Source: Oopsacas minuta (lineage: Eukaryota; Animalia; Porifera). From it: a DNA stretch of 64,000 nucleotides. The notes beneath the pieces were generated by a model, which was not told where the DNA came from, did not search any database, and saw nothing but the letters and a program-made list of their open reading frames with translations. Within the stretch, counting starts at the first letter, position 1, and each line of letters starts with the position of its first letter. The stretch lies in NCBI GenBank assembly GCA_024704765.1, contig JAKMXF010000233.1, forward strand, positions 186,001-250,000, written 5' to 3'. The translations under genes and the position numbers were made by a program. Shown in pieces: positions 3-55,300 of this stretch.

Positions 3-2015
3 CCAACATTGCTAGCTGGAGAAAATGGTAAACACGGTGTAATACATATTCTAGCTGGGGCTGGTGCTGATTTGGATAAACGTGATCTTAATGGTAATGT
101 AGCGCTAATCGCTGCGGCTAAAAACGGACACTCGATCACTTTGAAGGAATTAATGTTAAACGGAGCTTCCCTTGAAGTAACAGATCATGAAAGGTACAAC
201 TGTCTAGAGCGTGCTATACAAAATAGGAAAGATCTCTGTGCTGCTATGTACATTCGCTTAGAACCGAATGAAGACTTCCTTGACTGTTATCTTAACAGCA
301 TTGAAATACATATATTTCGTTTAGTTAACCTAAGATTAACTGAGACGTTAGAAGCATTGCTGGATAGGATGGTTATACAAAATGATAAGTCTCATACTAA
401 TAGTGGGGTTGTGTATACGAAATATTTAGATATCGATACTGAGAATAATATTCCAGAAGATAAGGGCTATGCGTCGAATAGGACATTCTTTCTCCAACGC
501 TTGTCTGAAATGGGCGATGAACAGATGGCATATCATGGGACCATTCGTTTGTTGGTTGATAAAAAAATGTCAAAGTTTGGGAATATTCTGTTGGGTGTAC
601 GATTGTTTTTCTATTGTGTATTCCTCATAGCTCTAGCCTATTCGCTTCTACAAGCTTCCGATGTACAAAATCCAGTGTTAGACACATATCTTCATGAACC
701 AGTGAATACTGTAAGATTAGTGACAGACGTGTTTGTCTTGATATTCGTGTTGGTGAATGTATTCACTGAATCAGTCGAATTCTTTCGGATTCTGTTACTA
801 ACGTTTAGTTATCTTAGTGGGAAAAAGAAAGAAAGGAGAAAGTTACAACTGCGAGATAAAACTTTTGAGAATATTTCAGAATTTGTGAATGAAGAAGATT
901 TCTATGAATTGTCTTCCATGAGTGAGGAAGAGAAACGAATACGAAAGTTGACGAGTCGTTTAAACGATTTCTTCTGTATTCGTGTATTCACAGATTATTT
1001 CACAGATAAATTCAACATTCTTGATTTACTCGGCTTGACAGCTTTACTTATTCTAATCGTGTTACGCGCTACAGGACATCCTGTACAATGGGTATTCGCT
1101 ACTGTTGCTTTTCTAATCAATACACTACGTGTATTCAAGTTTATTGTATTGATTCCACATCTTGGTCCATATGCTACTACTATATACAAGATCCTAGTTA
1201 GAGACGTCCCGCTATTCTCTAGTCTATTCTGTTTGACATTACTAATGTTCACTGGGAGTTATTACATATCATTACGAGCTCCGTACACGGTTGAAGGTTT
1301 CCAAAATGCGTCACTTATGCAGGAAACGCAACGTACAGCTGGTGTTGACGATACTCTATATTGGGTACTGCTATCTGGACTTAGAGTTCTCCTTGAGGGG
1401 AATATATACCAGGATGAGTATATGTATAATCAGTTAAATTGGCTAGCTGCTGGCATATACGCTGGCTTTCTATTTATGACAGTTGTTGTACTGCTGAATG
1501 TGTTCATTGCCCAATTGTCTGATACTTACGGAGATGTTAAACGCAATGCAAATAGGACGTATGCTTGGCAAAGGCTTAATTTCATAGTTCAAGTACAACG
1601 AACTTCACTTCTATCACTTTGTATTGATTTCAGGAAAATTTTCTATATCGGGGAAGTTTATATTGACAAGTACGATTTGTTTAAGTACTATGCTGTTCAT
1701 CATATCAGGGATTTGAATATTAAGAATTTCACTGATGATATCGATGTTAAAACTATGCTAACTATGATTCAAACTCAACAAACTGTAGCTAGGAAAACTC
1801 AAGAAGTTGCCAGACTCGTTGCTCCTACCCAGGCCAGTCAGAAGATATCTGATTCGACGAAATTCGAGCATGGAATTGCGTCACATGATATAGGTGTGCT
1901 GAATGCTAGGGTTTCACAGATATTGCAGTTATTAAGGGAGAAAGATACCCGTTTGGAACAGAAGATATCTCGTATCCTTGATGATAAACTAGCTAAACTA
2001 ACTAAACGTATTTAG
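3..2015 (+). CDS. Ankyrin-repeat TRP channel (TRPA/TRPV-like), paralog 1; 5' end lies outside the window
   Basis: Frame is open to the window edge (listed start at 9 is TTG). Ankyrin repeats (GNVALIAAAKNGH), pre-S1 YHGTIRLLVDKKM, six hydrophobic segments, pore GLRVLLEGNIY, S6 LLNVFIAQLSDTY, TRP-box-like AWQRLNFIVQVQRT, C-terminal coiled coil. Colinear with ORF 2722-5559. Confidence 0.9.
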   Translation, partial: PTLLAGENGKHGVIHILAGAGADLDKRDLNGNVALIAAAKNGHSITLKELMLNGASLEVTDHERYNCLERAIQNRKDLCAAMYIRLEPNEDFLDCYLNSIEIHIFRLVNLRLTETLEALLDRMVIQNDKSHTNSGVVYTKYLDIDTENNIPEDKGYASNRTFFLQRLSEMGDEQMAYHGTIRLLVDKKMSKFGNILLGVRLFFYCVFLIALAYSLLQASDVQNPVLDTYLHEPVNTVRLVTDVFVLIFVLVNVFTESVEFFRILLLTFSYLSGKKKERRKLQLRDKTFENISEFVNEEDFYELSSMSEEEKRIRKLTSRLNDFFCIRVFTDYFTDKFNILDLLGLTALLILIVLRATGHPVQWVFATVAFLINTLRVFKFIVLIPHLGPYATTIYKILVRDVPLFSSLFCLTLLMFTGSYYISLRAPYTVEGFQNASLMQETQRTAGVDDTLYWVLLSGLRVLLEGNIYQDEYMYNQLNWLAAGIYAGFLFMTVVVLLNVFIAQLSDTYGDVKRNANRTYAWQRLNFIVQVQRTSLLSLCIDFRKIFYIGEVYIDKYDLFKYYAVHHIRDLNIKNFTDDIDVKTMLTMIQTQQTVARKTQEVARLVAPTQASQKISDSTKFEHGIASHDIGVLNARVSQILQLLREKDTRLEQKISRILDDKLAKLTKRI

Positions 2016-2721
2016 TAGTACGAAATTGCATGAAAACGAATAGTAACATTTATTATTATTATTGACTCACAACGAACACTCAAATATTTTTGATATCTTT
2101 TCCGTATTTCACTTTCATATTTTCCATTTTATATCCTCATCATTTATTATTTTGCTCAACTATTTATTGATATTTATAATATAATGACATATTCTTGAGA
2201 GGGAGGAATATATTGTTGGCGGGCAAATATTTCTTTAATTAGTTCCTTGCTATAATCGTCTTATACAACCTTCAATAACTGTCGTTAACCAGCTGAACAT
2301 AACGACATTTTTAGGTCTGCAATTCCTTGGCAAAACTTCACAAATCTTTGTGTAATTCCCCTGTCTACGCGTAGATTTTCTTTGAAAGTAAATTATTGAA
2401 TATTTAAAATTCTACTAAGTATGATTGACTGTATAGCTATAAGATAATGAGAAAATAATCGTTCTATTAGAACCTGCTATTACTTACATTGACTAGCTGA
2501 ACATATAAACACTCCACAGTTACTTGTAAATATATAATTATTATTACCACTCCTGAATATATATACATTTACATACTAACAGTTCTCTATACTACAAAAT
2601 ATCACAAAATGTTATAGGATACTAAAAATAGCCCAGAGTTAAGTCAACGAGCTGAGTAGCGAACTATTGGATACAAACGCAATAAAATATCAAAATATGT
2701 AAATATGGACATTCGTTGAAC

Positions 2722-5559
2722 CTATTTCAGATCTTTCAACTTTTCTTCGATCTTTTCTAACAGAGCTCTGTTCGATTTCTCAAGTTTCTCATCCAATAGG
2801 ACATCTTTCTGTCTAATTTCTGTCATCAGCTGATCGATCGTCTCCCTTAATTCTCTTATTTCTTCGTATTCCTGTTTTTGTGGTTGTTCTTGTGCCTGTG
2901 GTTGTTGTTGGGGTGGTGGCGATAAGCAGCTAGCATCACCCCCAGTTGTATTAAGCTTGGCAATTTCCTGAGTTCTTCTTGCCACAACCTGTTGATTCTG
3001 AATAGAAGAAAGCATTCCTTTCACTTCTACATCCTCAGTAAAACTCTTAACATTCATATTCTTAATACTGTATACACCATAATGCTCAAACAATTCTTCT
3101 TTTTCTATTTCTATTTTTTTGGTGAAATATTTCTTTCTGTAGTCAATGCAAATTGATAGCAAAGAAGTTCTCTCAACTTGTACGATAAAATTCATTCTCT
3201 GCCATGCAAATGTCTTTTCAGCATTCTGTTTAACTATTCCATATGTGTCTGATAGCTGAGCAATGAACACATTTAAATACACAACAACCGTGAGGAATAG
3301 GAATCCCAGATAGAGTGAGGCAGCAAGCCAGTTAAGCTGTCTAAACAAATACTGACCCTCGTATACGTTCCCCTCTAGCAGTACTCTAAGTCCTGATAGG
3401 AAGACCCACTGTACTTCATTGTCTACACCCCTTGTACGTTCTGTGTTTTCCATTAAGGAGGCATTAGCAAACCCAGCTGCTGTGTATGGAGTCCTCAGAG
3501 ATACGAAATATCCTCCAGTGAAGATTAGAAGTGTGATTAGGAAAAGACTAGAAAATAGTGGAACATCATTCACCAGGATTTTATATATGATATTAGTATA
3601 AGGCCCAATTCGTGGTAGCAATGCTACTAGTTTGAATAGTCTGAATCCGTTGATTAGGAATGTTAACGTAGCAAATACCCATTGAGTTGGTTGTGTGGAT
3701 AAACGAAGTAGGATTAGAATGAATAGTGTTAGTAGTCCTAAAACATCCAAATAGTTTGATTTATCACTGAAGTAGTCAGTGAAAATACGGATACAGATTA
3801 GGTCATTGAGTCTACTTGTGATTGATCGTTTTTTCATTGCTTTCGCTGGCGAGGCTGCGGGGGGACCGATCACGTCATCATCATCATCATCATCATCATC
3901 ATCGTCACCATTTTTACTGATATCTTCTTCTTCGACTGTTTCCGCCCGTAATAACTCTTTCTTTCTATCTTTTTTCTTGTCTTTTATATACCGTATTGTT
4001 AGCCTAGTTACCCGGAAGAACTCTACCCCCTCTGTAACCAAATTAAAGACAAAGTAGACTAGCACAAATAATTCTGCGAGTATTCTGATAATGTTTAGTG
4101 CACCATTTGTGTACTCGTTCAAATCGATCGGTCTAAAGGCTGCTAGTATTATAAGGGAGTATGCAAGAGCCAGGAGGAATAGGATATAGAAAAATATTTT
4201 TATCCCCAAGACACGGTTACCAAATTGTTTCATTTTCTTGTCAACCAGGAGACGTATTGTTCCATGGTATGCGAGATCTTCATCATCCAATCCTGCGATA
4301 CGTTGTAAGAGAAATGTAGTATTTTTCTCATACTCATTTTCATTATCTGGCATTTTTCCTGCGGTGTCTATATCGAGATATTTTGTTTGTACCGTGCCTT
4401 TAGTTGCATTCAGAGGATCTTCTTGCACAACCATTCTATCTAAGAGAGCTTTAATAGTTTCTTTGAGTTGATAGCGGACAATCTTAAACAGGCTAATTTC
4501 TATAGTGTTCAGATAGTACTCAACGTAGTCGTTCTGTGGTGAGAGACGAATAAACATGGCTGCCGCTCCATCTTTTTTGTTATGAATCGCCCTTTCAAGT
4601 GCGTTGTAGCGTTCATTATCAGTTACGTCAAAGGAAGCTCCATTGAGGATCAGTTCTTTCACTGTATTCGTGTGACCTAGACTTGCTGCCACGATCAGTG
4701 GGGCGTCACCTTGTTTGTCTCTTTGATCTAGATTGGCCCCTGCTGCAGCTAGGATATGGATACAACCTTCTTTCCCATTCTCAGCTGCAATCAGAGCTGG
4801 TGATTTACCTATATTCTCTCTTGCATTCACATCTGCATTTCTTGTCGTGAGAAGATAGAGAACACTCTCATCAGCATATTGACATGCCATGTGTACAGTA
4901 TTGTATCCATCATTATTCACTGCATTAGGGTTAGCATTCTTATTGAGAAGATACTGCACTGTGTGAGTGTGCTTGTTTTCAACAGCCTTATGCAATGGAG
5001 TGTTACCATTACTATCCTTAGGGTTGACATCCATTCTAGGGAAGAATGTTAAAATTTCATTTAGTACAGCAGTACTGCCTGTAGCGGCTGCCTCATTCAG
5101 ATGTGCTTGTGGGATTACAGGCGTATCGACATTTAGAAGTGCACATGCTATGTCTCCACAGTTCGTTGAACAGATTGTGTAGAGTGCTAGACAAGTTTGG
5201 TGTTGAAATTCGTCCTCATCATCTGGGGTTTTTTCGTTTCTATGTCTCTCTAGGATAATCTCCATAATATCTGTACGTGAGTAGAATGCTGTATGTGTCA
5301 TAGCATAATTATTATCATCTTTCTTGTATAGGTAAGGCGCACCTCCCAATAACATCCTCTTCAACTTGTCCATTTTGTAATTTCCTAATACGTCATTGAG
5401 TTCTGCGTAATCTTCATCATTACCTTCCCATTTCTTTATGCCAATGATTGATTTTGATTTGATGAATTTCTTAAGATAGGGCTTTGTAAAGAATATATCA
5501 TCTTCATCAGTTTTGTTTTCTGTTAGAGATAACAATGGGACTGCTGGATCGGATGCCAT
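2722..5559 (-). CDS. Ankyrin-repeat TRP channel (TRPA/TRPV-like), paralog 2, intact, intronless, 945 aa
   Basis: About 8 ankyrin repeats (e.g. NGNTPLHKAVENKH), six TM segments, S6 YLNVFIAQLSDTY, pore GLRVLLEGNVY, C-terminal coiled coil. Convergent with paralog 1. Confidence 0.92.
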   Translation of the reverse strand: MASDPAVPLLSLTENKTDEDDIFFTKPYLKKFIKSKSIIGIKKWEGNDEDYAELNDVLGNYKMDKLKRMLLGGAPYLYKKDDNNYAMTHTAFYSRTDIMEIILERHRNEKTPDDEDEFQHQTCLALYTICSTNCGDIACALLNVDTPVIPQAHLNEAAATGSTAVLNEILTFFPRMDVNPKDSNGNTPLHKAVENKHTHTVQYLLNKNANPNAVNNDGYNTVHMACQYADESVLYLLTTRNADVNARENIGKSPALIAAENGKEGCIHILAAAGANLDQRDKQGDAPLIVAASLGHTNTVKELILNGASFDVTDNERYNALERAIHNKKDGAAAMFIRLSPQNDYVEYYLNTIEISLFKIVRYQLKETIKALLDRMVVQEDPLNATKGTVQTKYLDIDTAGKMPDNENEYEKNTTFLLQRIAGLDDEDLAYHGTIRLLVDKKMKQFGNRVLGIKIFFYILFLLALAYSLIILAAFRPIDLNEYTNGALNIIRILAELFVLVYFVFNLVTEGVEFFRVTRLTIRYIKDKKKDRKKELLRAETVEEEDISKNGDDDDDDDDDDDVIGPPAASPAKAMKKRSITSRLNDLICIRIFTDYFSDKSNYLDVLGLLTLFILILLRLSTQPTQWVFATLTFLINGFRLFKLVALLPRIGPYTNIIYKILVNDVPLFSSLFLITLLIFTGGYFVSLRTPYTAAGFANASLMENTERTRGVDNEVQWVFLSGLRVLLEGNVYEGQYLFRQLNWLAASLYLGFLFLTVVVYLNVFIAQLSDTYGIVKQNAEKTFAWQRMNFIVQVERTSLLSICIDYRKKYFTKKIEIEKEELFEHYGVYSIKNMNVKSFTEDVEVKGMLSSIQNQQVVARRTQEIAKLNTTGGDASCLSPPPQQQPQAQEQPQKQEYEEIRELRETIDQLMTEIRQKDVLLDEKLEKSNRALLEKIEEKLKDLK
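3875..3905 (-). repeat. (GAT)n microsatellite encoding a poly-Asp tract in the TRP S2-S3 region
   Basis: TCATCATCA... run on the + strand; shorter and interrupted in the duplicate at ~9127-9155. Confidence 0.8.
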
Positions 5560-11920: not shown

Positions 11921-12478
11921 ATGTCAAAAGAGGTTTTAATACCAATAGCAAACGGTTCAGAAGATATTGAGACTGTAACCTTGATAGATGTCCTACGTAG
12001 AGCTCAGGCAAATGTCACAGTAGCGAGTATAGGAGAAGAGCTACTTGTAGTTGCTGCTAGAGGTACGAAAATAATCGCAGATGTTAAAATTTCGGATTGT
12101 AAAATGAAAGAATGGGATTTGATTGCTTTACCTGGTGGAATGCCTGGAGCAAAGAATTTATCAGAAAACAGTGTCTTAGTTGAATTGTTGAAAAGCCAAA
12201 ATGAGAAAGGCAAGCTTTATGCTGCTATTTGCGCTAGTCCAGCTATTGTATTACAACCACATGGATTGTTAATTGAAAAGAATGCCTGTTGCTATCCTGC
12301 CTTCAGAGAGAATATTCCACCAGAACAACTCGCTCCTGCACACAATAGAGTTGTTGTTGATCAAAATTGTATTACGTCACTGGGCCCAGCAACAGCAATA
12401 GAGTTTGCATTGAAATTGGTTGAGCTGTTGTTTGGTAAGGATCTGTCTGATACAATTGGTAAAGCTATGCTATGTTAG
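11921..12478 (+). CDS. DJ-1/PfpI family protein, YajL/ThiJ-like, intronless
   Basis: GSEDIE (Glu17), LPGGMPGA, ICASP nucleophile Cys104, TSLGPATAIEFAL. Confidence 0.92.
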   Translation: MSKEVLIPIANGSEDIETVTLIDVLRRAQANVTVASIGEELLVVAARGTKIIADVKISDCKMKEWDLIALPGGMPGAKNLSENSVLVELLKSQNEKGKLYAAICASPAIVLQPHGLLIEKNACCYPAFRENIPPEQLAPAHNRVVVDQNCITSLGPATAIEFALKLVELLFGKDLSDTIGKAMLC

Positions 12479-16249: not shown

Positions 16250-16927
16250 TCATGGCTCCAATGGACAGTAGTTATTCCTCATCATAAAATGGTAAGTTCC
16301 AATTTCTACTAGCAATATTCTCTTCTCTTCTAAGAGTGTCTTCCGGGTTCTTTCTAATAAGTCAATTTCTTGTAGATTTGTTTTATCTTCTTGTGAGAAT
16401 TTCTCTTTTCCCCTGTAGTAGACATCGCGATACTTTTGCTGTTTCATCGAAAGTAATTTATTGCAATTTTCTACATATAGAGAAGGCATTGACCGAGAGC
16501 CTTGACAGTCACTTGTGCATATACAGTCAATATTATCATAAATATCCTGTAAATCAAATATCCCCAGATTCCATAAGGGCTGAAGTAAATTTAGTTGAAA
16601 TCTATTCTCTCCCTCATTATTTTCAAAATTTTTATTTTGTGATATTTTCGCCCCGAAAATATATTCGTATTCACTCTTGTCAAAATTTCTACCTATACTC
16701 AGGACTGATTCGCAATCTTTCCAGTTACCTTCATTCGATGCTTTCATTCTGTTTATCTTATACACGATGTAACAGTCTATTTCTTTCCTGTGTTTGTACA
16801 CATGTAAGTCTTGCTTTTTATCTAAAATGTATCTGCCTTTCACAAAGAACCTTCTATTTTTTTCTTTTTGTAGAATGTGTATATTAATTCCATATCTCTT
16901 TTCCATTAGTTCAGTATATCTTATCAT
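16250..16927 (-). CDS. Unrecognised ORF family member 2, 225 aa
   Basis: Single-exon ORF with three blocks clearly homologous to 19363-19932; no known domain recognised. Confidence 0.6.
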   Translation of the reverse strand: MIRYTELMEKRYGINIHILQKEKNRRFFVKGRYILDKKQDLHVYKHRKEIDCYIVYKINRMKASNEGNWKDCESVLSIGRNFDKSEYEYIFGAKISQNKNFENNEGENRFQLNLLQPLWNLGIFDLQDIYDNIDCICTSDCQGSRSMPSLYVENCNKLLSMKQQKYRDVYYRGKEKFSQEDKTNLQEIDLLERTRKTLLEEKRILLVEIGTYHFMMRNNYCPLEP

Positions 16928-17924
16928 TGTTGTATAAAATTAAACAAGAAAACACGCTTTTTATATTTACGATTTGATGTTTAACTTTATGGCCCAAATT
17001 GTTTACGTTAGTTCAATCATGTGTCTGCTTACACATTGCATTCAAATGATTTGTTAGATAGATAATACTTGCCTCCACTCGTTGACCAGAATAGGCTACA
17101 CATCGGGGTATCATAGTTCTCCTCTATTTATAGATGGAGTTATTGAATGTAAATTTTATGTGGTAAACTTTTAAACTATTTTACCTAAATCAACTGTAAC
17201 AAAATTCCTGGATTTTATGGTATTTTAGGTATATCCTTTGATGGCGTACGTATCTGTAATATTACAAATTAAATAAAGATAATACGTACTTTACAGTAAC
17301 CCATTTCTAGTAAGTTATTTTGATATTTACCATGAGAGTATGATCGTATTAATTATGCTAAGGTCACGTACAGTAAATTACTCATTTCACAGCCATGATT
17401 TTCTAGGAAATGAAACGGAATTTTATTTAAGATTTTTTAATTATTTATTAACCTGATAGATATTGTACAAGTATTGATGGTGTATGTATTTGTCATCTAA
17501 TTATTCCATTATTGTAATCATCATATAAAATTTTTTTGTGATAATGTTCTCTGAAATATTTGTCAGTGTAGGAGGACAGTAATATCACCATGTGTCAGGA
17601 TATTAATATGGGGATTTTCCAGTTACTTTGTTAACTTTTTCTAATTTCTTACATTATAAGTGTTATCCTTTTGATGGTTATGGTATAAAATCCCCTAAAA
17701 ATTAATAATATTTTTCAGCTAATTGTATCATCAATTCGATTATTTGAAGTACTTTATTGTGTAAAATTGATTACAGCCATTTGTCATATAATCATTATCA
17801 GCTTTAAGAATTGGTACGATACGAACTCCGCTTTCAATAAGAAATTCCATTGAATCCTTATGCGTATTATAATTGTATCAATCATCATATATTCCATGTC
17901 TATATTTATTAGCCTTATTAATCT

Positions 17925-18575
17925 ATGATGTCAATCCTTTTAAAATGGAATGGATTATCTACGAGGAAGAAATGTATATTCACTACAGCAACATTTGCAC
18001 TTTTAGCTGTCGGGATTAATTATATGTTTAATTCTAAGCAGTTTTCTCGTACAGATAATTTACTACAACATTTTAACAGAATTACTCTAATGGCACTAGA
18101 TAACACGAATAGAGAATTCAAAGCTTATGAATTATGGAAAGACAATCCGGTTATGATAATGGCAATCCGTAGACCTGGATGATTCTTGTGTATATCAGAA
18201 GCAAACAGAATTGCTTCTATTTCACCTCTTTTGGAAGAGAAAGGGGTTAAACTATACGGTGTTGTCCATGAAGAGATGGGAGGTAAGGAATTTGAAAAGT
18301 TCCTACACGCTGAAGTTTATTTGGATTCGGCTAGAGGATTTTTTGGTCCAGAAGAAAAATGGATTGGATTTGGCGAGTTTTTTAAACCAGTGAATTGGAT
18401 CAGTTCATATTATGCTTGGAAAAATGGCGCCAGTGGTAATTCCAATGGAGAAGGACGGTTGTTAGGTGCATTGTATATTATTAGCAACGATAGGGTTGAA
18501 TTGGAATTTAGGCCAAATGCAGTTGGTGATTTCTGTTCTCTAGAATTGATTAAAGATGTGATAAGGAAATTATAG
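17925..18575 (+). CDS. SELENOU: Selenoprotein U (PRXL2A/FAM213A-type AhpC/TSA-like redoxin), 216 aa with Sec86
   Basis: ORFs 17925-18182 and 18186-18575 are in one frame, separated only by TGA (18180-18182) plus TTC. Reading is RRPG-U-FLC, exactly at the first Cys of the PRXL2A RRPGCFLC motif. N-terminal TM helix, GEGRLLG motif, downstream SECIS. Confidence 0.93.
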
Positions 18576-18600
18576 ATTTGGTAATACAAATTTAGTAATT

Positions 18601-18657
18601 TACATATGATGGTGTTGAGTTAAATTCTATGATTCAATATCTGATCTTTTTTGTGTA
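18601..18657 (+). promoter_or_regulatory. Eukaryotic SECIS element (3' UTR of the SelU gene)
   Basis: ATGAT core (18606-18610); helix II GGTGTTGAGT (18611-18620) pairs at all 10 positions (3 G-U) with ATTCAATATC (18632-18641); apical AAA (18622-18624); 3' core TGAT (18642-18645); helix I TACAT/GTGTA. Confidence 0.9.
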
Positions 18658-19362
18658 TTACAAAATTTCAATATTGTGTCCTTATATTTACAGGATTAGC
18701 GTTAATACCAAATATCCTGCAATACCTATATTGTAGGCAATTAATACAAATTTGTGTTTGCAAACTGTAATATTCTCATATACAATTGTGTTGAGATGTT
18801 GCTATATCTCAAATAGATTGAAAGTCTTTTTGTGACGGTTTGAGATTTTTAAAATATTTATTCTCGTTAATTTGTGAATTTTTGTAATGCTTTGCTGCAA
18901 ATCTCGTTAATTCATTTAAGTGAACAAACTGCGAGCGGAGGGAGAAAAATATCTCAAATATGATCTGTGCCGACAGCACGTTAATTCCAAATAATAAGGT
19001 AAAATACTTTTCCAAGGCTCATTATATGTTGTAGTCGTGCAAAATTGCATTTTACTAAAGCAATTCGTATTTTGCTCTTTTTTACAAATGATTTTACAGT
19101 TATAATCAGCTAATATTATCAAAAGTTTTAATTAATCTCAGTTTAAACAGATTTACATAAATTTACTTTGAATAAATATACTAGAATGTACACATAATCA
19201 CATTGCAATTACTGAAAATAAAATATGTATCTTTATCATTGAGGTTATTTTAGGAAGATACTTTGAATTTGGACAATTATTTAACCTTTTAGAAATCTGA
19301 TCTCACTCTGACAATCCTGCAAAGTATAAATTACAAATATTTGTTTGAATTCTTATTTTATT

Positions 19363-19932
19363 TCATGTAATTGCTTTGCAATTACACTCTGATTTCCAAT
19401 TATTATCTTTTGCGCATATATTTTCACCATTTTCGAGTAACTCCCATAAATTCATTATCCCAATGTTTCGTAATGGGTATAATAGGTTTTTCTTTGGATC
19501 TGTTATTTCATAACTTTCTGGTGAAAATGGTTCGTATTTTATTGGTGGTTCATAATAATCATCAGAGCCTCCTAGCATCATTTGGAAGGAATATTTGCTT
19601 CGAGTCGAGCTTTCTATGCTAGCTGTGTGTATTTTGATACTTGTGGATCTATTTTCATCGTCTCTTCCTCCCCATATACGTGTGTAGCAACTTTTATTAA
19701 ATGAGCTAATTGGTTGTCTTTTAGGAGCTTCTACGCCCCAATTTTTGTCATTACTTGCCTTTACTCTGTTGTATTTATTCACCACATAATAATCATCTAA
19801 TTCATTGTGTTGATAGATTTCTCTGTCTTGCTTAAGATTAGCGCAATACTTACCTTCTACGAGGAATAATCGTTGCTTCTCTGTAGTATCTTTAGTGATA
19901 GTGTTTGAAAACTGTGTTTGTTTACTACTCAT
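19363..19932 (-). CDS. Unrecognised ORF family member 3, 189 aa
   Basis: EKQRLFLVEGKY...KQD...NRVKASNDKNW, FNKSCYTRIWG and NLLYPLRNIGIMNL match member 2. Confidence 0.6.
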   Translation of the reverse strand: MSSKQTQFSNTITKDTTEKQRLFLVEGKYCANLKQDREIYQHNELDDYYVVNKYNRVKASNDKNWGVEAPKRQPISSFNKSCYTRIWGGRDDENRSTSIKIHTASIESSTRSKYSFQMMLGGSDDYYEPPIKYEPFSPESYEITDPKKNLLYPLRNIGIMNLWELLENGENICAKDNNWKSECNCKAIT

Positions 19933-28357: not shown

Positions 28358-30316
28358 ATGTCAAACAGTCAAACCCTTCTAGAAGGGTTTTTCCATGCAA
28401 ACGGGCGTAAGAGACAGAATACTGGCTCTATCCCAATATCAAAGAGAAGCAAGGAACTAACTCCAGCAAAATCTATACTAAGCCTGGATTATATAAGTTT
28501 ACAAAAAGAGCAAATAAAACAACAACCAGTTCCTCAACCCATCATTAGAAAAGCTAAGCTAGCACCTGCCAGGAAACCAAGAGCATGTAAGAAGCTAATG
28601 CAAGCAACTGCTCCTCCCCCAACAACCAGATCGAGCAAGAGGAATGCAAAACTCGCGCCTAAAGAAACATTCTTAAAACTTGGCAAGGCACTGTCTCATA
28701 ATAAATCACCACTCAAATCTTCTACCCCTCTCAATTCCGGATTTAAGGCTTTATCAGCTACGAAACAAGACACTCAACAGCTTGTGGAGCCTAAAATAAC
28801 TTCTCCTATATCATCTCCTACCATATTGAAGATACCTACTCCAGGTGGATCTACGATGGAACAAATAAAGAGAGTAAGGAATAAACTTCTCCAGCAAAGT
28901 AGTAAAAATTACAATATCCCTCCTCTACCAAATCAAACTGATAAACCATCTCTAGCACAAAGACTAGCTGAACCAACTATTGTTGAGCTATCGAGGAATA
29001 GTAACGAGACTTTAAAACCGATTGAAACCCCATCAGAAGCTAGTTGTATGTCTCCAAGCAAGAAGGATTGTATAATTAGAAAACTAGCTCTGTTGAAAAC
29101 TCCAGAAAAATCACCGAAAATGAAAGAATTCAAAGAATTACAATTCACAAGTCCAACCAAGAAATCAATAAACACAACTCCATTGAAATCACCTCAATAC
29201 AAAAATAGTTACCATCTAGCTGCCGATTCACAAACGCCTATTTCATATACACAATCTATTCTATTGGAACATTTCCGCTGTATAGATGTAGTGTTATCCA
29301 TGGTAGAAAGGAGAAAGGAATCTTGTAGCTTTGAGAAGTTACAGAGAGCTGTCACTACCATGTGTGGGAAACAAATGACACTAAGGAACCTCGCACAAAT
29401 CATGCATCTGTATCCTACAGCATTTTCACTTTCTTACCAACCCATACGTACCTCAATACATTCACCCAGACGCGGGCAGTTTCAATTGATAATAGTTGCT
29501 AATAATGATTTCCATTCCGAATCACCGACTGATAGTTCTGAAGGGAAAACCTTGACTAATCAGGGTATGCTAGCAAGGAAAAATCAATTTCTGACTTATA
29601 TCATAGAATATCTTAAAGGTTATCATAATAGATTTCTACGAGCACTGGTCCCGCCGATTATATTGCCAAATGATAAGATAAAACGTTGGCATCCTGAGTT
29701 CAATCTTGAAACAGTCCCGAGCATTCCTGAGGGTAATATGCCTCAAAAACCACAGACAAACACCCCACAAACTGCGAAACAAATCCTCGCTTCTTCTCAA
29801 GAATTATTACCAACACGAATAAGTAGAGTTATGTTGAAATTCACCGAGGAAAACTCCACACAAGATTCGACGATAGATTCTAATTCAAAAGTTAGTTATA
29901 ACGATTCGAATGAATTGAAAGGAATCTCAAAGAATTTAATTGAACGTATCCGTATTCGTGAACAAGAGAAAGCTAAACTTAATATGATCAGAGATGATAC
30001 CGTACTACACAAGTTAGACATGTTAGAAAGGATACCAGAAATATGTAGTATTGTACGGAATATGTATTTAGCTGAGCAAAGAGGTACACTACCTTGGGCA
30101 GATGTTTTGTATAAATTAAGAGATAGCCATCACTCCAAAATGGAACAAAAATATTTAGAAGAACATTTACAACTGTTACTTGAAATTCTACCACAATGGA
30201 TATCTGTTGTTAATCCTAAGGGGACGAAATTTCTAAAAGTCAAACGCAACACCCCTCTGAACACCTTACTATCTGATTTGGAGCGTGAAAAAGCGCGATT
30301 AGACACAGAACAATAG
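28358..30316 (+). CDS. CDT1: DNA replication licensing factor Cdt1, intronless
   Basis: N-terminal PIP box QTLLEGFF, geminin-binding middle domain (SFEKLQRAV...LAQIMHLYP, RWHPEFNL), LKGISKNLIERIR, C-terminal MCM-binding winged helix. Confidence 0.93.
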   Translation: MSNSQTLLEGFFHANGRKRQNTGSIPISKRSKELTPAKSILSLDYISLQKEQIKQQPVPQPIIRKAKLAPARKPRACKKLMQATAPPPTTRSSKRNAKLAPKETFLKLGKALSHNKSPLKSSTPLNSGFKALSATKQDTQQLVEPKITSPISSPTILKIPTPGGSTMEQIKRVRNKLLQQSSKNYNIPPLPNQTDKPSLAQRLAEPTIVELSRNSNETLKPIETPSEASCMSPSKKDCIIRKLALLKTPEKSPKMKEFKELQFTSPTKKSINTTPLKSPQYKNSYHLAADSQTPISYTQSILLEHFRCIDVVLSMVERRKESCSFEKLQRAVTTMCGKQMTLRNLAQIMHLYPTAFSLSYQPIRTSIHSPRRGQFQLIIVANNDFHSESPTDSSEGKTLTNQGMLARKNQFLTYIIEYLKGYHNRFLRALVPPIILPNDKIKRWHPEFNLETVPSIPEGNMPQKPQTNTPQTAKQILASSQELLPTRISRVMLKFTEENSTQDSTIDSNSKVSYNDSNELKGISKNLIERIRIREQEKAKLNMIRDDTVLHKLDMLERIPEICSIVRNMYLAEQRGTLPWADVLYKLRDSHHSKMEQKYLEEHLQLLLEILPQWISVVNPKGTKFLKVKRNTPLNTLLSDLEREKARLDTEQ

Positions 30317-33282: not shown

Positions 33283-34125
33283 TCACTTATTCTTCCCGCT
33301 TACTCTCTCATACCTCTCATGAGCAGATTCAGTCGACAGAAGTACCCTGTGGTTTTGAAACTGTTGAGAAGACAAAAAGCGTGCATCAGTCCCTAATAAT
33401 CTGTCTAGAATCTCAAAATTACCGAAATTCCCCACAAAGCTATAATGATGGAAATCATGCCACTCATTCGAGAAAACAAATGGTAAATGGTATCCCGTAT
33501 GGTGTATAATACTAATATACTGCGCTAGCAATACCCATAAGATTATCACAAATATATGTCCGCCGAGTATAAGTGGTCCAAGAATTGTACTCAAGGAATT
33601 GCACAGTAAGTGTTCTAATGGATGTGAATGTAAACTGGCAGCTGTACAAGGAGAAGTCCATTCGTGATGTATTTTGTGTATGTGCTTGTATAAGAAAGGA
33701 GTGTGTAGTAGACGATGTGAAATGTGAAACCAGATTTCCTGGAATGCTATGTACCCGAGGACAAGTAAAGAACTTTCTAGAAAACCTGGCAAAACTGGGC
33801 TAGCCGAAATACCTCGCATAGCGGCAAGCGTGGAGAATTGAATTGATGCACATAGAGTAACTACTAATTGGTTGAAAAGGCCGTAAGCTATTGCACGCTT
33901 AAATTTATCCACATCAATAGGCAGTTTCTTGTTTCGTTGTATCTTGTGTTTGGCGATAAAATGAGGCTGGCCTGTTAAGTCGACGTAACTGAAAAATGCG
34001 ACAAACAACCAGTAAAAGCAATTAATACATATCCATGGGAAGATGGAGAATATTATGAAATTGTTGTGATTGCATAGGTCTAGGATTAGCGTCCAGAGAC
34101 GAGAAGTGTAAGACAATGATTCCAT
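33283..34125 (-). CDS. FAXDC2: Fatty acid hydroxylase/sterol desaturase superfamily protein, intronless
   Basis: His boxes HRLLH, HKIHH, IHHTGY, HDFHH; HPLEH; terminal LDRLLGTD. Confidence 0.85.
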
Positions 34126-47003: not shown

Positions 47004-48624
47004 CTATGGATATTCATAAGTAATATTATGGTGCTTTATAATAACCAAAATATTGTAAACATTAACTGAGAAGAATAGAAGACCAGCTAGCCAGAGGAGA
47101 GGATAGGTAGAGTATCCTTCAAACTCGTATAAATACGCTGGAAATAACCATAGCAGCTAAACACAAGAAAATATAAGTATTATCTTTGATAAAATTATAG
47201 TCAAGAGTCAACTCCAGTTATGTCGAAGTATGAAATTGTACAAATTTGGTCCCAAACCGTCAAAGTGAGTTTCGATATAACTGGAGTTGACTGTACAAAG
47301 CTTAAGTCGCGAAACTTCAGTGGTTAATACATATTTACGAGAGTATGTATAGAATTATACCTGAGCTATTATCCACATAGAGAACATCTTCGTAGCTGTT
47401 TTGAATGAGAGAGTTGAATATGGTATTATAAGAGGTAGAATACTCAGATACCATAGAAAGTACTAGAAAATAAGTCATTATAGATCACATATGGTAATTC
47501 TATTTATGAATATAAGAACCATGGATGTAAAATATTGAATAAAGGAATGATACGAATATAATCTTAATCATATTGTTGTAGATATACGAACCTGAGAGGT
47601 GACAACTTTATTGTATGTAGCGAATACAGCTGTTTGTAAGAATACAGCTAGCTCTAATTGTCTACAGAATGAGTATCCAGTGAATATTATAAGAACGAAT
47701 TGTGGTATGAACACCAGAGCTCCGATAAGAGGTAGTAGTGATGAGTGCTGAGATAAGTGTAGCATGTAGAAGTATGGAGAGAAATTATGCTTCGTATCGG
47801 TACGTGTAATATGATAGAAATAGGTTTCTGATAGAAATTCATCGCCATAACTAATCCATACAAAAGTTAAATGGATAAAAAGGTGAAATCTTGTAAACTT
47901 TTACATCAAATAGAATCCAAAGCCAAACTTACATTAAATAGAATCCAAATGCTAATGTCAAGAAAACCGATCCAGAAATAATTCCAAACTTGATTCCTTT
48001 CAAATTAAACCAAACAACTCCTGTATTCTTCTTACCAATATACCCACAATACAAATATAACGGGAGAGCATATACAATAGGATATACCTTAAAATGTACA
48101 GCGAGTCCATATACGATAGCAGATAACTTAATCCAACCTGATTTCAAACAGGCTAATACCAGCAGTACTAGAATACACACGATAGATTCTGCATTACCAC
48201 GAGTACACACAACTATGTTTAGAGGGTTGAACAACCAAAAGCAAGTAGCGAGTTTTCTAGAATATTCTCCGTGTTTTTTACCATCAATACTGACATATAT
48301 CAAATAGCCAGCAAGTATATCAAGGATTGAGAAAAGGATCTTACCATATATGGCGAAATAACAGTTTGGTATTAAAATCCATGCCAGTAAAGGCGTGTAA
48401 CGATAAGTCTCACGTTCATACGGGGAAGCCCCATCACATACATGCTGTGCTGCTTCTGAGAATACAGTATAGTCTATATCTGTGTATTTCACTCTGAAGA
48501 TAGTATCATGGAGGCGTCCATATAGAATCAGTGCTGCTCGGATAATAACTGAGATTGTTAGTAAATTCCTAATTGATGAACTGTTTATTTGTTGTTTTGT
48601 TGTGTGATAAAGTGTTTCTAACAT
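47004..48624 (-). CDS. PIGM: GPI mannosyltransferase 1, 4 exons
   Basis: Exons 48624-47933, 47850-47592, 47462-47361, 47156-47004. Motifs YTDIDY, SPYERETYRYTPLLAW, RGNAES, HFKVYPI, HNFSPYFY, SQYFLWY. Confidence 0.95.
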
Positions 48625-49356: not shown

Positions 49357-52300
49357 CTATTGTGGTTCATTTGAAGCTACAAATTCGAACCATTGTCTCA
49401 GTGCATTACTAACCGTCTCAGGTAGAGTTTGTATATCTCTCAGGACTATGTAGAAGGGGAATGGAAATATTTCTAGGTAGGATTTGAACTGTGGAAGTGT
49501 GTTTGTTTGACTGAATACTGGGACTTTGATGTCAACTATTGAATCTTTGTTATCTGGACTATCTAGTATTATAAAAATTACAAAAATTCCATTGTCCATC
49601 GTCTGTCTCACAGCTTTTTCAACAATATCTTTGCCTTCAAGAAATATTCCCCTTCCATCTGAAATGATTATCATTAGTTGGTTAATGCTCCCTGAAAAAG
49701 GTGTGTGTACATATGTACGATTTTGCACCATCAAAGGTGTGATCTTTCGCAGCATTTGCGCGATTTTAGTTTTCATTTGCTCCATGCTAAGTTGTTGCAA
49801 AGCTTGATATGCCCTTTCTTGAGTAAACGGAATTCCTAGGGGTAAAATTACGTCTGTTGTTTTGCCGAACTTACAAACACCCAGCTGTCCAACATCTAGC
49901 CAGGTAAGTGCATTGCCGAGCAACGCGAAAGTTTGAAAAGCAATAGTTTTAGACTTGTAAATAGCCATACTCTTGGAATCATCGATAGCTAACATAATTT
50001 GATATTGACGTTTATTTGGTTGTGTTCTTCGTAGCCAAATCTTATCATTACGAAACTGGCTTGCAATGTAAGGGATTATTTTCCGCATGTTTAGACGTTT
50101 TCCTGTCCTGTAGTCGCCCTTTAGTTTTGAAGCTTGTTGTGGTTGTAAGATTAATCGTAACTGCTCGCAGAGATCGCGAGATAAATGAGATACCTCGCGG
50201 TCTGTTTCAAGCCATAACTTCTGTGTTTCACTTGCAATTTGTAACTGCTCAATATTTTCCAATTCCACTATAGGAAGTTCGGTTTGCATTGTATGTACTG
50301 TTGGATGAATATATTGCTCGTTTGTAGCGAATAAAGACACTAGATTTCTTGTTGTATTATCCTCATCCATAATCTCGGATGTATAGCTATCATCTTTACT
50401 TTCTCTGTCATCATCTTGTGTTATGAACTTATTCTCACTAGTTACACGTGTATCCATTGATAGCTCTGCATCTCTTTCAAGTTGCACTTTATTTGAATCT
50501 AGATTATCATTACTTTCTTCGTTAGAATCTAAATCGTAGCTCTCTGAGGTTCCTGTTTGGGGCTGCGTCTTTGCTTGTTCATTAGTTGCACTATCAAGTG
50601 CTGTAGTGTCAGATTGATGTCTATCAGAGTCTTTAGTTTTGTGTTTGTAGAGATTAGAGATTTGTTCATTATCTTGTGGTTTGTTTTGCTTGTTGTTATT
50701 GTTATCTAGCATATCTTCGTTTAGGATTTTTTGCTTTTTCAACTGCGGTTTTTCACCTTCTTCTGCTAATTGTCTGTTTTCATTAGAGCGAGATAGTTTT
50801 GATTTTAACTTATTTTCATCGCTTGTGCCCGATTCGTTTCGATTCGATTCACCACCATCATGTGTTTCTGTGACTTCTCTGTCATTTATACTCCCAAAAT
50901 TATCGAAAGCCTCTTCATTCTGTGTATTTTCATCCATCTGTCCGTTCGTACCAGTACCGTATTTGCTGCTTGATTGTACAGCAGTTTGAGGGTCACCTGT
51001 GTGTTCTGTTGTGTCAAAGGGGCGTGGGTCATTTTGGTTTGTATCAGGCTCGCTTTCATTATTAGACTCATTACCTTCTAACTTATCCATGGTTTTTAAA
51101 TCGAAGTCTTGTTCACTTTCATTATCCATAGTCTCCAGAGGATCTTGAATAGAATCATCCACTTCCATATCATCTCCTGAATCTTGATCAGAACTTTCAA
51201 TGCATTGCTCAATGGAATCTTCACGCTCGATTCCATCTAAATTTAAGTCATCTGAGATATCTAATGGTTCTGGTAGTTGACCTTGTTGTTCATTATCAGT
51301 AGTCTCACCGGGTAATTGCTCATCCAAATCTAAATTATCATTTAACTTGTCTTGCAATTGATCAACAGCTGTATCTTCAATCCCATCCTTTCTATTTTCC
51401 TTTTGAGAATCGCTGTTTTTAACACTTTCACCTTTCGCAACTATCTTTTCATCCTTTGATTGATTCCCTCCTTCTTGATTTCCTTTTACTTCTCCTTCAT
51501 CGTCGCTCGATTCTCCCCACATTTCTTCATTCATTTGTCCCTGTTTATCATCTACCTCTCCTATCCGTTTATCCAAATCATCAACATTAGATCCCTCACT
51601 GTTCCCTTCATCATCCTGTCCACTCGCTTTATCACCCATTCCACCTTCAAAATCCTCACTCATTTCAACTCCCTTTTCTTCCTTGATTTCTCCCTCGTTT
51701 TCATTCTTCGATTCTTCATTCTGTAATCCTTCAACCTGTTCTTGATTGTCTATCTGTTCACTGACATTGGTAGCTCCCTCTCCATCGCCGAAGCCTCCCC
51801 CTTCGAATTCTTGTAATATAGTCTCTCCCTCTTTCGCCATTTCCTCAATAACAGCTTCTGGTGCGCAAAATCCTTTGGCTGACACAAGATTAAAAATGGA
51901 GAGGATTGTTTGAAGCAACTCATTTGAATTGTATTGTATTTCAACATGTTTGAGGAATACAGTCTCACACAAAAGCAAATAACTTCTGAGTACTGATTGC
52001 AATTGCAGGAATGACAGTGTTTGCATTTGTAACTTTTCTCCTGTACAGGAGCCTAATTCGTCTAAATTTGATTTTAGATTTAAGACTGTCTTATCCAAAA
52101 GGCGAAAGATTCTTCCTTGTTTGCATATTTCGAATTCAACATTGTCTAAAAGGAGGTTTTTCAGGCATAGATCCGGATTTCTTGATGAATTCGTTAATCC
52201 CAACTTTTCTAATGATACAGTTTGGTCTGATGTATTGATGTTTGTTAACGTTTGAACAGAAGTTAATATTATCTGGAAAATCCTTGAAGTAAAGAGCATT

Positions 52301-55300
52301 TTAATTGGATGTTCACTAACCGTTGTTTCAACACGAATATTTTCAAGTTGATGTTGAATGGATAAGAATTGTTCCAACGTTTGTTCAAACTTTGAATGTA
52401 TTTTGAACAATCCATGGAAAAACCCATATTCAATATTTCCGGTTGCTTTACTGGTTAGGGCTTTGGTTAATTCACATGTAAGTATTTTTAATAAGTTTGA
52501 AAGTATATTATACTTGTGTTTCAGAACAGTGAAATCATTCCATTGAAATAGTATACAGGTTTGTAAAGTTGCAAGATCATGCAATAATATATCCACATCG
52601 TTATAAGTATTGTCTAAAAGTTCTCTAATATTTACAGCTACCATTGAATCAGCAATTATTCTAGGCAGTAGAGAATCTTCGAGGGGAAATGTTCCATTTT
52701 GCGTTTTGTTAATTCTGGTTAATAGGTAAGAACACTCTCTTAATTGTTCTAACAGGCCCTGAATAATACACCTTAGTTTCCCTACGAAACAATACACTTG
52801 AGTGGGTAGCAGTAAATGGGATTGAGGAGTTGAAATGTTTGTGTGATCAGAGGAACGCACTAGCATATTGCTGATATCATTTATAGACTGAGCTAACTGG
52901 AGAATGTGTTGTCTATGGGTGATTATACAATGCAACATGTCGATTGAGTAGGCACGGAGGGATTCCACTAAGTATGGCGTAAGCTGTTTATGTGGTTTAT
53001 GTAGGGACATATCTAGAGAAGTAATCAGTTTAAGATTATCGAAGAATACTCTATCAATATGCTGGACACATGTATTGGTAGATATAAGGAGATTTGGTGA
53101 TGGTAGTAGTGTGTGAATTGACGCAAAATCGATCGTATCGAGTAAAGTTTTACCTCCTGTAGAAGCGAATCTGTTTGAAAAACCAAATGACCTCAGAAGT
53201 TTGAATAATTCAGAAAGAAGTCTCTGTTTCTTCATACAAAGGAATTTTTGTTGTTTCATTTCTTCTTTTTCAGCTGGTGATAAACTCTCTTTGGTTTCAG
53301 AAATAATTTCATTCATATTATCTCGGATTTCTGTAGTTAAATTTCGAATTTCTTCCATTTCTTGGAGTTGTTTGTCGTCTCTTGAATACTTTAACATGTA
53401 TTTTAGGAGCTTTGCACCTATTTTGTCAGTTCTTTTCGGTAGGACAACGTTTGATTGTTGACATTCCTTCAAAATATGGGAAATATCGACTGGTGAATTT
53501 TCGCGTAGAGTTTGTACTATTTTAACTTTCATTTCTTTCAAACAATTATTTGGTGGTAAAACGGGAAATTTCTGAAGATTAAATGTGCTAATAGTTAATA
53601 GCTCGTGAATCGGTTGGTTTAGTACTTCTTCATATTTTCTTATATGTTTGTGAATTGTTCTATGTGATTTCTCAACAGTTTCCTTTAATCGCCAATAATT
53701 AATATCGTTCCATTTAGAAATGGACACAAATTCCTTCAATTCCTTTACTACTGGGGTACATTGAGTTTCCAAACGATTCTTTACGCTTTGAAGAAATTGT
53801 GAATAAAATGAGTGTAAACTTGTTAGTGTGTGGAATATTGCATTTGCAGATTTGAAGGAAAACTTGAAGTTTCCAAGCAAATTTAGTTTCATTTCAAAAT
53901 TCCCTAAAGTGCTCGATTCAATAAATTGTTTGAGCAAATTTGCGATATTTTCAATGTTTTCGAAATTTTCAATTTTTTCTACAGAAAAATAAGCATTTAT
54001 AATTTGGTAAATGTGCATGAACAATTTGGTAGATTTCATCTCATATTTTCTTTTTGAAGCTTCAAGGACTTTAGGCCATCCTACTAATTCCATTTTTCTA
54101 TATCTAATTACGAGTTCAGAAATATGTCCCAATTCTTCCTGTATAGATACATGTTTGGCAGCATATGCTTCCCAATCCTGTGCTTTTGTAATCAAGATCT
54201 GTAATCCAGTCAAAATCTGCATAATAGGACTTGTAATAGATAATGATAGTATTCTATCTGCTACAACTATTAATTGATTCAGTACAGAGTGATCTGGCCA
54301 TTCTTCTAACAACTGATATATTCTAGTTTTGAATGTAATCAGTGCTGGTTTGACTTGTTGTAACTCGCTTGGATTGGGATCTATGTAAAAATCATATATT
54401 TCTGTCGTCAAATTTTGGGTGAAAGATTTCAAGCAAATGTCAGCTATTGCAATATGAAGATTATAATCGCCTTTCAAATTCGTTGACATACCATGTGTAG
54501 TATTATATTGCTGCAGAATACGTTCTTGTAGAAATATACCTGAAATTTGGGATTGGTTATTGAATTTCGAATTTTGAATTAGGAAATTTCCTGTATGAAA
54601 ATAGGAATGACTATTTGTTAGTATTGTGTAAGTTTCTTCAGTAAAACTCCAAATATTTTCATCCAAATTCGGTTTCAAACTTTTCGACGTGTCCGCTGAA
54701 ATGTTCGTTTCTGTATTTTCTACGTCACTAAATCTGTCATAGTAATCTGGAAATTTCTCCTTAAAATCTTTCTCAATAATTTCTTCAGAAGAGTCTGAAC
54801 AATGCTCTACTTCTTTATACTTGTAAAGAGAATCCTTTTCTATTGCTTTCTGCTTCTCTCGTTCTATGTATTTATTCCATTCTTCGCTGTATAAATCAAG
54901 TATTTTGTAAAATAACCTTTCTAATATGTCCAGAGAATAAGGCTTTAATGATTTTAACTCTAAAATCCAAAGTAACACTAGCCTACATATTTTCTCTCGA
55001 AAATTTGAGGATATTTTGAGAAATATTTCTGAATTAAGAATGTTTGTAATTCTATCGATATTTGTTGGAGAGAGCTCATCATAATTTGAGAAAGTTATCA
55101 ATTTCCGTTGAATAAAGTCTATTGGAATAGAAATAATATTTTTCTGAATTCTGCTATGAAGACCATAGAGTAAAATTGATAGAGAGAATGCAAATGGCGT
55201 TATCACGTCAGGATATGCTAAATATTTTCTTTGTAAGTTAATAATCGTTCTCGAAATTGAGTTGATATGTGTTGATAAGCGTTGAATGATGTTTTGTGGT

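What the first reader, a model, noticed from the sequence alone, without database searches (positions are those of the whole stretch)
17925..18657. Hidden selenoprotein U gene: in-frame TGA in a UxxC motif plus a canonical SECIS
Seen in sequence: two ORFs are one reading frame broken only by TGA at codon 86, giving RRPG-U-FLC, and 30 nt after the TAG there is ATGAT-[10-bp helix]-AAA loop-TGAT. Established: PRXL2A/C10orf58 has RRPGCFLC, and its Sec form (SelU) occurs patchily in eukaryotes, e.g. fish; eukaryotic UGA recoding requires a 3' UTR SECIS with the GA/GA quartet. Inference: this is an intronless, membrane-anchored Sec redoxin that standard annotation would split or truncate. If the host is an early-branching animal, it bears on whether Sec or Cys is ancestral in SelU.
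Basis: partly seen in the sequence, partly recalled or inferred. Interest (0 to 1): 0.85.

Follow-up and report, generated by a model that had tools for sequence, protein, structure and literature searches.

The report
Glass-sponge selenoprotein U gene
This glass-sponge gene encodes a small redox enzyme (selenoprotein U / PRXL2A) whose internal "stop" is almost certainly read as selenocysteine; the call is correct, but the family is well known and its selenium form was already reported in another sponge.

Summary
One frame (17925-18575, +) is broken only by TGA at codon 86, inside RRPG-[TGA]-FLC. A SECIS-shaped hairpin starts 30 nt after the TAG.

Three other assemblies carry the same gene between the same neighbours. 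All keep TGA at that column. The frame after it is under strong purifying selection (dN/dS 0.15-0.21, synonymous sites near saturation). The SECIS core is the only non-coding stretch that still aligns.

The TGA column aligns with the first Cys of RRPGCxxC in proteins named peroxiredoxin-like 2A. About 7,000 other codons in the window hold no in-frame TGA, so the genetic code is standard.

An RNA-like run of the same sample covers the coding part heavily, with no splice between TGA and SECIS and no listed variant at the TGA. A foreign 18-nt leader joins at an AG just before the ATG.

This is a real SelU1/PRXL2A selenoprotein gene that gene callers split. It is a new member of a known kind. Jiang et al. 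2012 already list Sec-SelU1 in the sponge Amphimedon and in Trichoplax, so the ancestry question is not newly opened. The scan also noted a second SelU candidate elsewhere in this genome.

The parts
17911..17912 (+). AG splice acceptor (ctatatttattAG|cc), 12 nt before the ATG. A foreign 18-nt leader is joined here in RNA-like contigs.
   Evidence: table 7: in X4, the loose letters TCTTCATAAAAAACTTAC lie before 17911. That sequence is absent from the window and from L001-L003.
17925..18179 (+). N-terminal coding part, codons 1-85, ending in RRPG.
   Evidence: It aligns to the N-terminal part of PRXL2A-named Cys homologues (ELWK..., RRPG). dN/dS is 0.20-0.39.
17973..18029 (+). Hydrophobic segment, residues 17-35 (CIFTTATFALLAVGINYMF). 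Putative signal anchor or transmembrane helix.
   Evidence: Kyte-Doolittle 19-residue mean of 1.67 here and 1.56-2.0 at the same place in the three orthologues. Inferred, not tested.
18180..18182 (+). In-frame TGA, codon 86: the proposed selenocysteine codon, first position of the UxxC redox motif.
   Evidence: TGA is at the same column in all four species and aligns to the Cys of RRPGCxxC. No listed variant in DNA or RNA-like contigs.
18183..18572 (+). C-terminal coding part, 130 codons. It starts FLC, with the resolving Cys at 18189-91, and carries the AhpC-TSA_2 domain.
   Evidence: Pfam PF13911 E = 1.4e-8. PDB prostamide/PGF synthase E = 8.7e-5. 62-68% identical in orthologues, with dN/dS 0.15-0.21.
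18573..18575 (+). TAG, the true stop codon.
   Evidence: The orthologues end at the same alignment column.
18595..18661 (+). SECIS element. Helix I pairs 18595-604 with 18652-61. The AUGA/UGAU quartet is at 18606-09 and 18642-45. Helix II pairs 18611-21 with 18631-41. Apical AAA is at 18622-24.
   Evidence: Fold. Conserved core in four species. Rfam SECIS_1 aligns full-length but below threshold (16.6 bits against 35; 16.3-22.4 bits in the orthologues). Pattern scan.

Best explanation
This is a functional single-exon selenoprotein gene of the SelU1 / peroxiredoxin-like 2A (PRXL2A) family in a glass sponge; earlier scan notes name the species as Oopsacas minuta. The mRNA receives a short leader at an acceptor 12 nt before the ATG. 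It runs unspliced through the coding part and carries a SECIS hairpin 30 nt after the TAG. During translation the SECIS, through SBP2, eEFSec and Sec-tRNA (inferred from the general eukaryotic mechanism), recodes UGA at codon 86 as selenocysteine. The product is a 216-residue thioredoxin-fold redoxin. Its active site is U-F-L-C, with Sec as the attacking residue and Cys89 as the resolving residue. A hydrophobic N-terminal segment probably tethers it to a membrane or directs it into the secretory pathway. Without Sec insertion, only an 85-residue fragment lacking the fold would be made.
For: Shown:
- One frame is broken only by TGA in RRPG-*-FLC.
- The C-terminal piece matches Pfam AhpC-TSA_2.
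- The best named relatives are peroxiredoxin-like 2A proteins from Helobdella, Sphenodon and Plectus.
- The TGA column aligns with the first Cys of RRPGCxxC.
- Orthologues in three other assemblies, with the same flanking genes, keep TGA at the same column and have no other stop.
- dN/dS after the TGA is 0.15-0.21, and dS is about 1 or more for every pair except the closest one (L001-L002, dS 0.40).
- The SECIS core and a 7-bp helix II are conserved with pair-preserving changes. The SECIS is the only non-coding blastn match between species.
- Rfam SECIS_1 aligns full-length at the homologous spot in all four species.
- Midasin (4867 codons), CDT1, a TRP-like channel and others in the window have no in-frame TGA, so the code is standard.
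- Run X4 shows depth near 0-4 upstream, above 1000 over the CDS, no joint between TGA and SECIS, and no listed variant at the TGA.
- Many database relatives begin exactly after the Sec position or have the Sec stretch cut out, the usual sign of Sec forms.
Against: - No direct evidence of selenium incorporation.
- Rfam SECIS_1 scores (16-22 bits) are below the gathering score of 35.
- No double compensatory change was seen in helix II, and L001's own minimum-energy fold prefers another structure.
- The kind of run X4 is not on record; that it is RNA is inferred from its depth profile, adapters and leader.
- The contigs covering the TGA itself were among the rows not shown.
- The Sec machinery was not searched in this genome. 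It rests on the conserved TGA plus SECIS and on unverified scan notes of other selenoprotein genes.
Confidence: 0.93

Rival explanations
1. A pseudogene or nonsense allele: a former Cys-PRXL2A gene inactivated by a TGY-to-TGA change.
For: One base change from TGT or TGC gives TGA. The public protein collection calls only fragments.
Against: TGA is kept at the same column in four taxa, although dS is about 1 or more for every pair except the closest one (dS 0.40). dN/dS downstream is 0.15-0.21 with no further stops or frameshifts. A conserved SECIS follows. The RNA-like run shows high depth over the coding part.
Confidence: 0.01
2. UGA is decoded by something other than the Sec pathway: a variant genetic code (UGA = Trp or Cys) or SECIS-independent read-through.
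For: Some database relatives are written with W at this position (RRPGW.LC in P0009, P0050, P0011). Cys is the residue found in the non-Sec homologues.
Against: About 7,000 codons of clearly coding ORFs in the window, including a 4867-codon midasin ORF, have no in-frame TGA. The one TGA sits at the redox-active position of a family known for Sec/Cys exchange. A SECIS is conserved in the 3' UTR. The W forms come from metagenome gene calls, most simply a translation-table artefact (inference).
Confidence: 0.03
3. Termination at UGA is the main outcome. The 85-residue anchored peptide is the product, and the C-terminal part is translated separately or rarely.
For: Sec insertion is usually inefficient (general knowledge). 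The X4 depth bins are higher before 18175 than after, though contig word depth is a poor measure.
Against: The thioredoxin fold and the UxxC motif span the TGA. The C-terminal part is more strongly constrained than the N-terminal part. No conserved start codon follows the TGA in the four species: the next residues are F-L-C in all of them.
Confidence: 0.03

Closest known systems
Selenoprotein U1 (Sec form of PRXL2A/C10orf58), including Aq.SelU1 of the demosponge Amphimedon queenslandica and Ta.SelU1 of Trichoplax (Jiang et al. 2012, PMC3473315)
   Same: Same domain (Prx-like2 / AhpC-TSA_2). Same RRPG-U-xx-C active site. One Sec codon. An AUGA-type SECIS in the 3' UTR. The host is a sponge.
   Different: A different sponge class (Hexactinellida). 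The gene is single-exon, compact and apparently leader-spliced. The SECIS lies only 30 nt after the stop. The glass-sponge proteins lack a short segment before the last strand and have VGD/IGD where relatives have FGD/WGD.
Human and other Cys-form PRXL2A (peroxiredoxin-like 2A), represented here by proteins so named from Helobdella, Plectus and Sphenodon
   Same: 31-40% identity over the C-terminal 130 residues. They share the ELWK...RRPG-C/U-xLC...GNxxGEGxxLGG motifs and a hydrophobic N-terminal segment in several members.
   Different: They have Cys where this gene has TGA, and Cys forms have no SECIS.
Prostamide/prostaglandin F synthase (PRXL2B, called SelU3 in Jiang 2012), PDB 9us9
   Same: Same Pfam family and thioredoxin-like fold.
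   Different: A much weaker match (26.5 bits, E = 8.7e-5) than to the PRXL2A-named proteins (60-89 bits). It is a different subfamily, so no prostaglandin synthase activity should be assumed.

Membership tests
SelU1 / PRXL2A selenoprotein | Prx-like2 (AhpC-TSA_2, PF13911) thioredoxin-fold domain | tested here: met
   E = 1.4e-8, 35.6 bits against a cut-off of 27, on the piece after the TGA. The orthologues' pieces also carry PF13911.
SelU1 / PRXL2A selenoprotein | Redox motif U/C-x-x-C, with the TGA aligned to the first Cys of the Cys homologues (RRPG-C-xx-C) | tested here: met
   alignment with PRXL2A-named proteins. About 30 hits carry RRPGCxxC.
SelU1 / PRXL2A selenoprotein | In-frame TGA conserved in orthologues, with purifying selection on the frame after it | tested here: met
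   TGA in 4 of 4 species, dN/dS 0.15-0.21 downstream. Synteny.
SelU1 / PRXL2A selenoprotein | Eukaryotic SECIS in the 3' UTR: AUGA/GA quartet, helix II, apical AAR, helix I | tested here: met
   Searches show all the elements, conserved in four species.
SelU1 / PRXL2A selenoprotein | SECIS reaches the Rfam SECIS_1 gathering score | tested here: not met
   16.6, 16.3, 22.4 and 20.6 bits against 35. The alignments are full-length (model 1-64) at the homologous place in each species. SECISearch3 was not available.
SelU1 / PRXL2A selenoprotein | Belongs to subfamily 1 (PRXL2A) rather than SelU2 or SelU3 | tested here: inconclusive
   Every named hit looked up is peroxiredoxin-like 2A (60-89 bits), and PRXL2B in the PDB scores only 26.5 bits. 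No tree with named SelU2 and SelU3 references was built.
SelU1 / PRXL2A selenoprotein | Selenocysteine actually incorporated at the UGA | not testable with these tools
   Needs 75Se labelling, mass spectrometry or ribosome profiling.
SelU1 / PRXL2A selenoprotein | Sec machinery (tRNA-Sec, SBP2, eEFSec, PSTK, SEPSECS, SEPHS2) present in the genome | not tested
   Only this 64-kb window could be read, and it has no tRNA gene. Scan notes list many other candidate selenoprotein genes in this genome; these are unverified by me.

The most novel reading that the evidence does not exclude
Glass sponges keep a membrane-tethered, leader-trans-spliced Sec-SelU1. If the second SelU candidate noted elsewhere in this genome is real, they carry at least two Sec-SelU paralogues. 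That would make Hexactinellida a second sponge class with the Sec form, and a compact, single-exon system for studying SelU1, whose biochemical function is still unclear.
Probability: 0.6. Interest if true: 0.3.

Novelty: new member of a known kind. Interest (0 to 1): 0.25.

Why it matters
The main value is correct annotation. The public protein collection holds this gene only as fragments (85 aa plus 99-123 aa). Gene counts and redox-enzyme inventories for glass sponges will therefore miss or mislabel it, as happens for selenoproteins in general.

It adds hexactinellids to the taxa with a Sec-form SelU1. This agrees with, and does not change, the published view that Sec is the ancestral state of SelU1 in animals (PMC3473315). 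It does not open a new question.

Tried and rejected
- **Variant genetic code (UGA = Trp or Cys):** rejected. Midasin (4867 codons), CDT1, a TRP-like channel, DJ-1 and other ORFs in the window have no in-frame TGA.
- **Pseudogene:** rejected on conservation and dN/dS.
- **Upstream 5' exon for the 18-nt loose leader:** not found in the window within 2 mismatches or in the three loci. It is therefore encoded elsewhere, which is consistent with a spliced leader.
- **Second SECIS-pattern hit at 47680-47711 (+):** it lies antisense to a minus-strand PIG-M-like coding region, has no suitable + strand ORF upstream, and the hit count is at chance level. Rejected.
- **Literature on Oopsacas selenoproteins:** none found. 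The Aphrocallistes genome paper does not mention selenoproteins.
- **Scan notes for SBP2, eEFSec, PSTK:** a words search returned nothing, which is uninformative.
- **Structure prediction of the whole protein:** not attempted, because the tools do not take a protein read through the stop.
- **X5 (a close relative, organism B):** its contig covers the TGA region, but not all of its differences were listed, so its codon 86 could not be read.

Full report
**Observation**

- An ATG at 17925, preceded by an in-frame TAA, opens a frame that runs to TAG at 18573-75.
- One TGA at 18180-82 (codon 86) interrupts it, in the context R-R-P-G-TGA-F-L-C.
- Thirty nucleotides after the TAG lies AUGA (18606-09).
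- A stem follows, pairing 18611-21/22 with 18630/31-41, with AAA (18622-24) at the top and UGAU (18642-45) on the 3' side.
- A lower stem pairs 18595-604 with 18652-61.

The minimum-energy fold of 18590-18665 is this hairpin: -17.2 kcal/mol, z = -3.3, and none of 200 shuffles folds as well. The upper helix is 11-12 bp here, four of them G-U pairs, rather than 10.

**What the protein is**

- The 130 residues after the TGA match Pfam AhpC-TSA_2 (PF13911, E = 1.4e-8). They also match, weakly, prostamide/prostaglandin F synthase in the PDB (E = 8.7e-5).
- An exhaustive profile search found 135 representatives. The ones that carry names are peroxiredoxin-like 2A proteins from Helobdella, Sphenodon and Plectus.
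- In a multiple alignment the TGA column falls on the first Cys of RRPGCxxC.
- Many other hits show the usual marks of mis-called Sec forms. Some begin exactly after that position (LCREEA..., MCREEA...). Some have the Sec stretch excised from the gene model (...GAVIMA|EA...). Some are written with W there.

**Comparative evidence**

Three proteins from other ENA assemblies (62-68% identical) led to loci L001, L002 and L003.
- Each locus has an 84-87-codon ORF ending in TGA directly in frame with the AhpC-TSA_2 ORF.
- Read as one frame, all four genes have TGA at the same column and no other stop.
- Both neighbouring minus-strand genes are conserved, so these are orthologous loci.
- By the Nei-Gojobori method, synonymous divergence is about 1 or more for every pair except the closest one (L001-L002, dS 0.40).
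- dN/dS is 0.20-0.39 before the TGA and 0.15-0.21 after it. The part after the 'stop' is therefore the better-conserved half of the protein.
- A chance open frame of 130 codons at this composition has probability about 9e-5.

**The SECIS**

- In the 3' UTR alignment the stretch UAUGAUG-R-U-R-UUG ... AA ... AUUCAAUAU-Y-UGAUCU is conserved in all four species.
- It is the only non-coding segment that blastn still aligns between the window and another locus.
- The consensus fold keeps the quartet region and a 7-bp helix II. Four pairs are invariant and three change on one side only (G-C/G-U, A-U/G-U). There is no double compensatory change.
- Helix I differs in sequence between species but forms in the window, L002 and L003. 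L001's own minimum-energy fold prefers another structure.
- Rfam SECIS_1 gives a full-length alignment at the homologous place in every species: 16.6, 16.3, 22.4 and 20.6 bits. All are under the gathering score of 35.
- My own loose SECIS pattern finds two sites in the 128 kb of both strands, against 0.87 expected from Markov shuffles. The site here has a 12-bp helix II. The other (47680) is antisense to a coding region and I take it as chance.

**Genetic code**

The window encodes ordinary animal genes as long uninterrupted ORFs:
- midasin (4867 codons)
- CDT1
- an ankyrin/ion-transport (TRP-like) protein
- DJ-1
- a PIG-M-like protein
- a fatty-acid hydroxylase

None contains an in-frame TGA. 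UGA is therefore a normal stop here, and this single TGA is a special case.

**Reads**

- X1 and X2 come from the same sample as the assembly and are probably its source, so they are not independent. They carry the stretch with TGA unchanged.
- X4's kind is not on record, but it behaves as RNA-seq:
  - depth is 0-4 upstream of 17840 and 1200-3300 over 17924-18511;
  - Illumina adapter tails are present;
  - a 2692-nt contig runs from 18482 through the SECIS and on to the convergent neighbour.
- No joint is reported inside the gene, and no variant is listed at 18180-82. The contigs covering that codon were among the rows not printed, so this is the absence of a listed difference, not a read-out.
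- One X4 contig has 18 foreign letters before 17911, at ...tttattAG|cc. They are not found in the window or in the loci.
- This fits the spliced-leader trans-splicing reported for glass sponges (PMC10282587) and noted by earlier agents for this genome. Those agents also name the species as Oopsacas minuta.
- X5, a close relative, carries the gene with scattered differences and small indels in the apical loop of the SECIS.

**Mechanism**

Shown: a conserved UGA in the redox position, a conserved SECIS, transcription, and standard code elsewhere.

Inferred from the established eukaryotic pathway:
- SBP2 binds the kink-turn quartet, and eEFSec delivers Sec-tRNA to UGA 426 nt upstream.
- The result is a 216-residue redoxin with a U-F-L-C centre.
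This is not tested.

**Comparison with what is known**

SelU is an established selenoprotein family. Jiang et al. 2012 (PMC3473315) list four SelU genes in the demosponge Amphimedon, including Aq.SelU1, and Ta.SelU1 in Trichoplax. They conclude that all three SelU subfamilies retained Sec in early animals.

The present gene is thus a hexactinellid orthologue of a known selenoprotein. I found no paper on Oopsacas or Aphrocallistes selenoproteins. The scan itself has noted a second SelU candidate and many other selenoprotein candidates in this genome; I did not verify those.

**Verdict**

Confidence that this is a genuine SelU1-type selenoprotein gene is 0.93. Novelty: a new member of a known kind. 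Interest is low to moderate (0.25), mainly as an annotation correction.

Noticed in passing
window 17911-17912 (acceptor) and the X4 loose end: An RNA-like contig carries 18 foreign letters (TCTTCATAAAAAACTTAC) joined at an AG 12 nt before the ATG. L001, L002 and L003 also have an AG within 0-13 nt of their ATGs. This looks like spliced-leader trans-splicing, which is known in glass sponges.
   Followed up: partly
window 16250-16927 (-) and 19363-19932 (-): The two minus-strand genes flanking SelU (225 and 189 aa, no Pfam match) are paralogues of each other (27-38% identity by tblastn cross-hits). Both are conserved around the SelU gene in L001 and L002; in L003 tblastn matched only the upstream copy. 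Function unknown.
   Followed up: partly
window 49357-63960 (-): A midasin (MDN1) homologue sits in one uninterrupted ORF of at least 4867 codons, with AAA_5 and midasin lid domains. It is a striking example of how intron-poor this genome is.
   Followed up: partly
P0009, P0050, P0011: These metagenome-derived PRXL2A relatives are written RRPG-W-xLC. They are probably Sec forms translated with a UGA = Trp table. P0013, P0017, P0023, P0040 and P0006 have the RRPGUxxC stretch cut out of their gene models.
   Followed up: no
window 47680-47711 (+): A GUGA-type SECIS-like pattern (helix II 8 bp), antisense to a PIG-M-like coding region, with no plausible + strand ORF upstream. Taken as a chance match.
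   Followed up: yes
window 11921-12478 (+), 28358-30316 (+), 2722-5559 (-), 33283-34125 (-): Single-ORF genes for DJ-1/PfpI, CDT1, an ankyrin plus ion-transport (TRP-like) channel, and a fatty-acid hydroxylase. This is ordinary animal gene content in a compact arrangement.
   Followed up: partly
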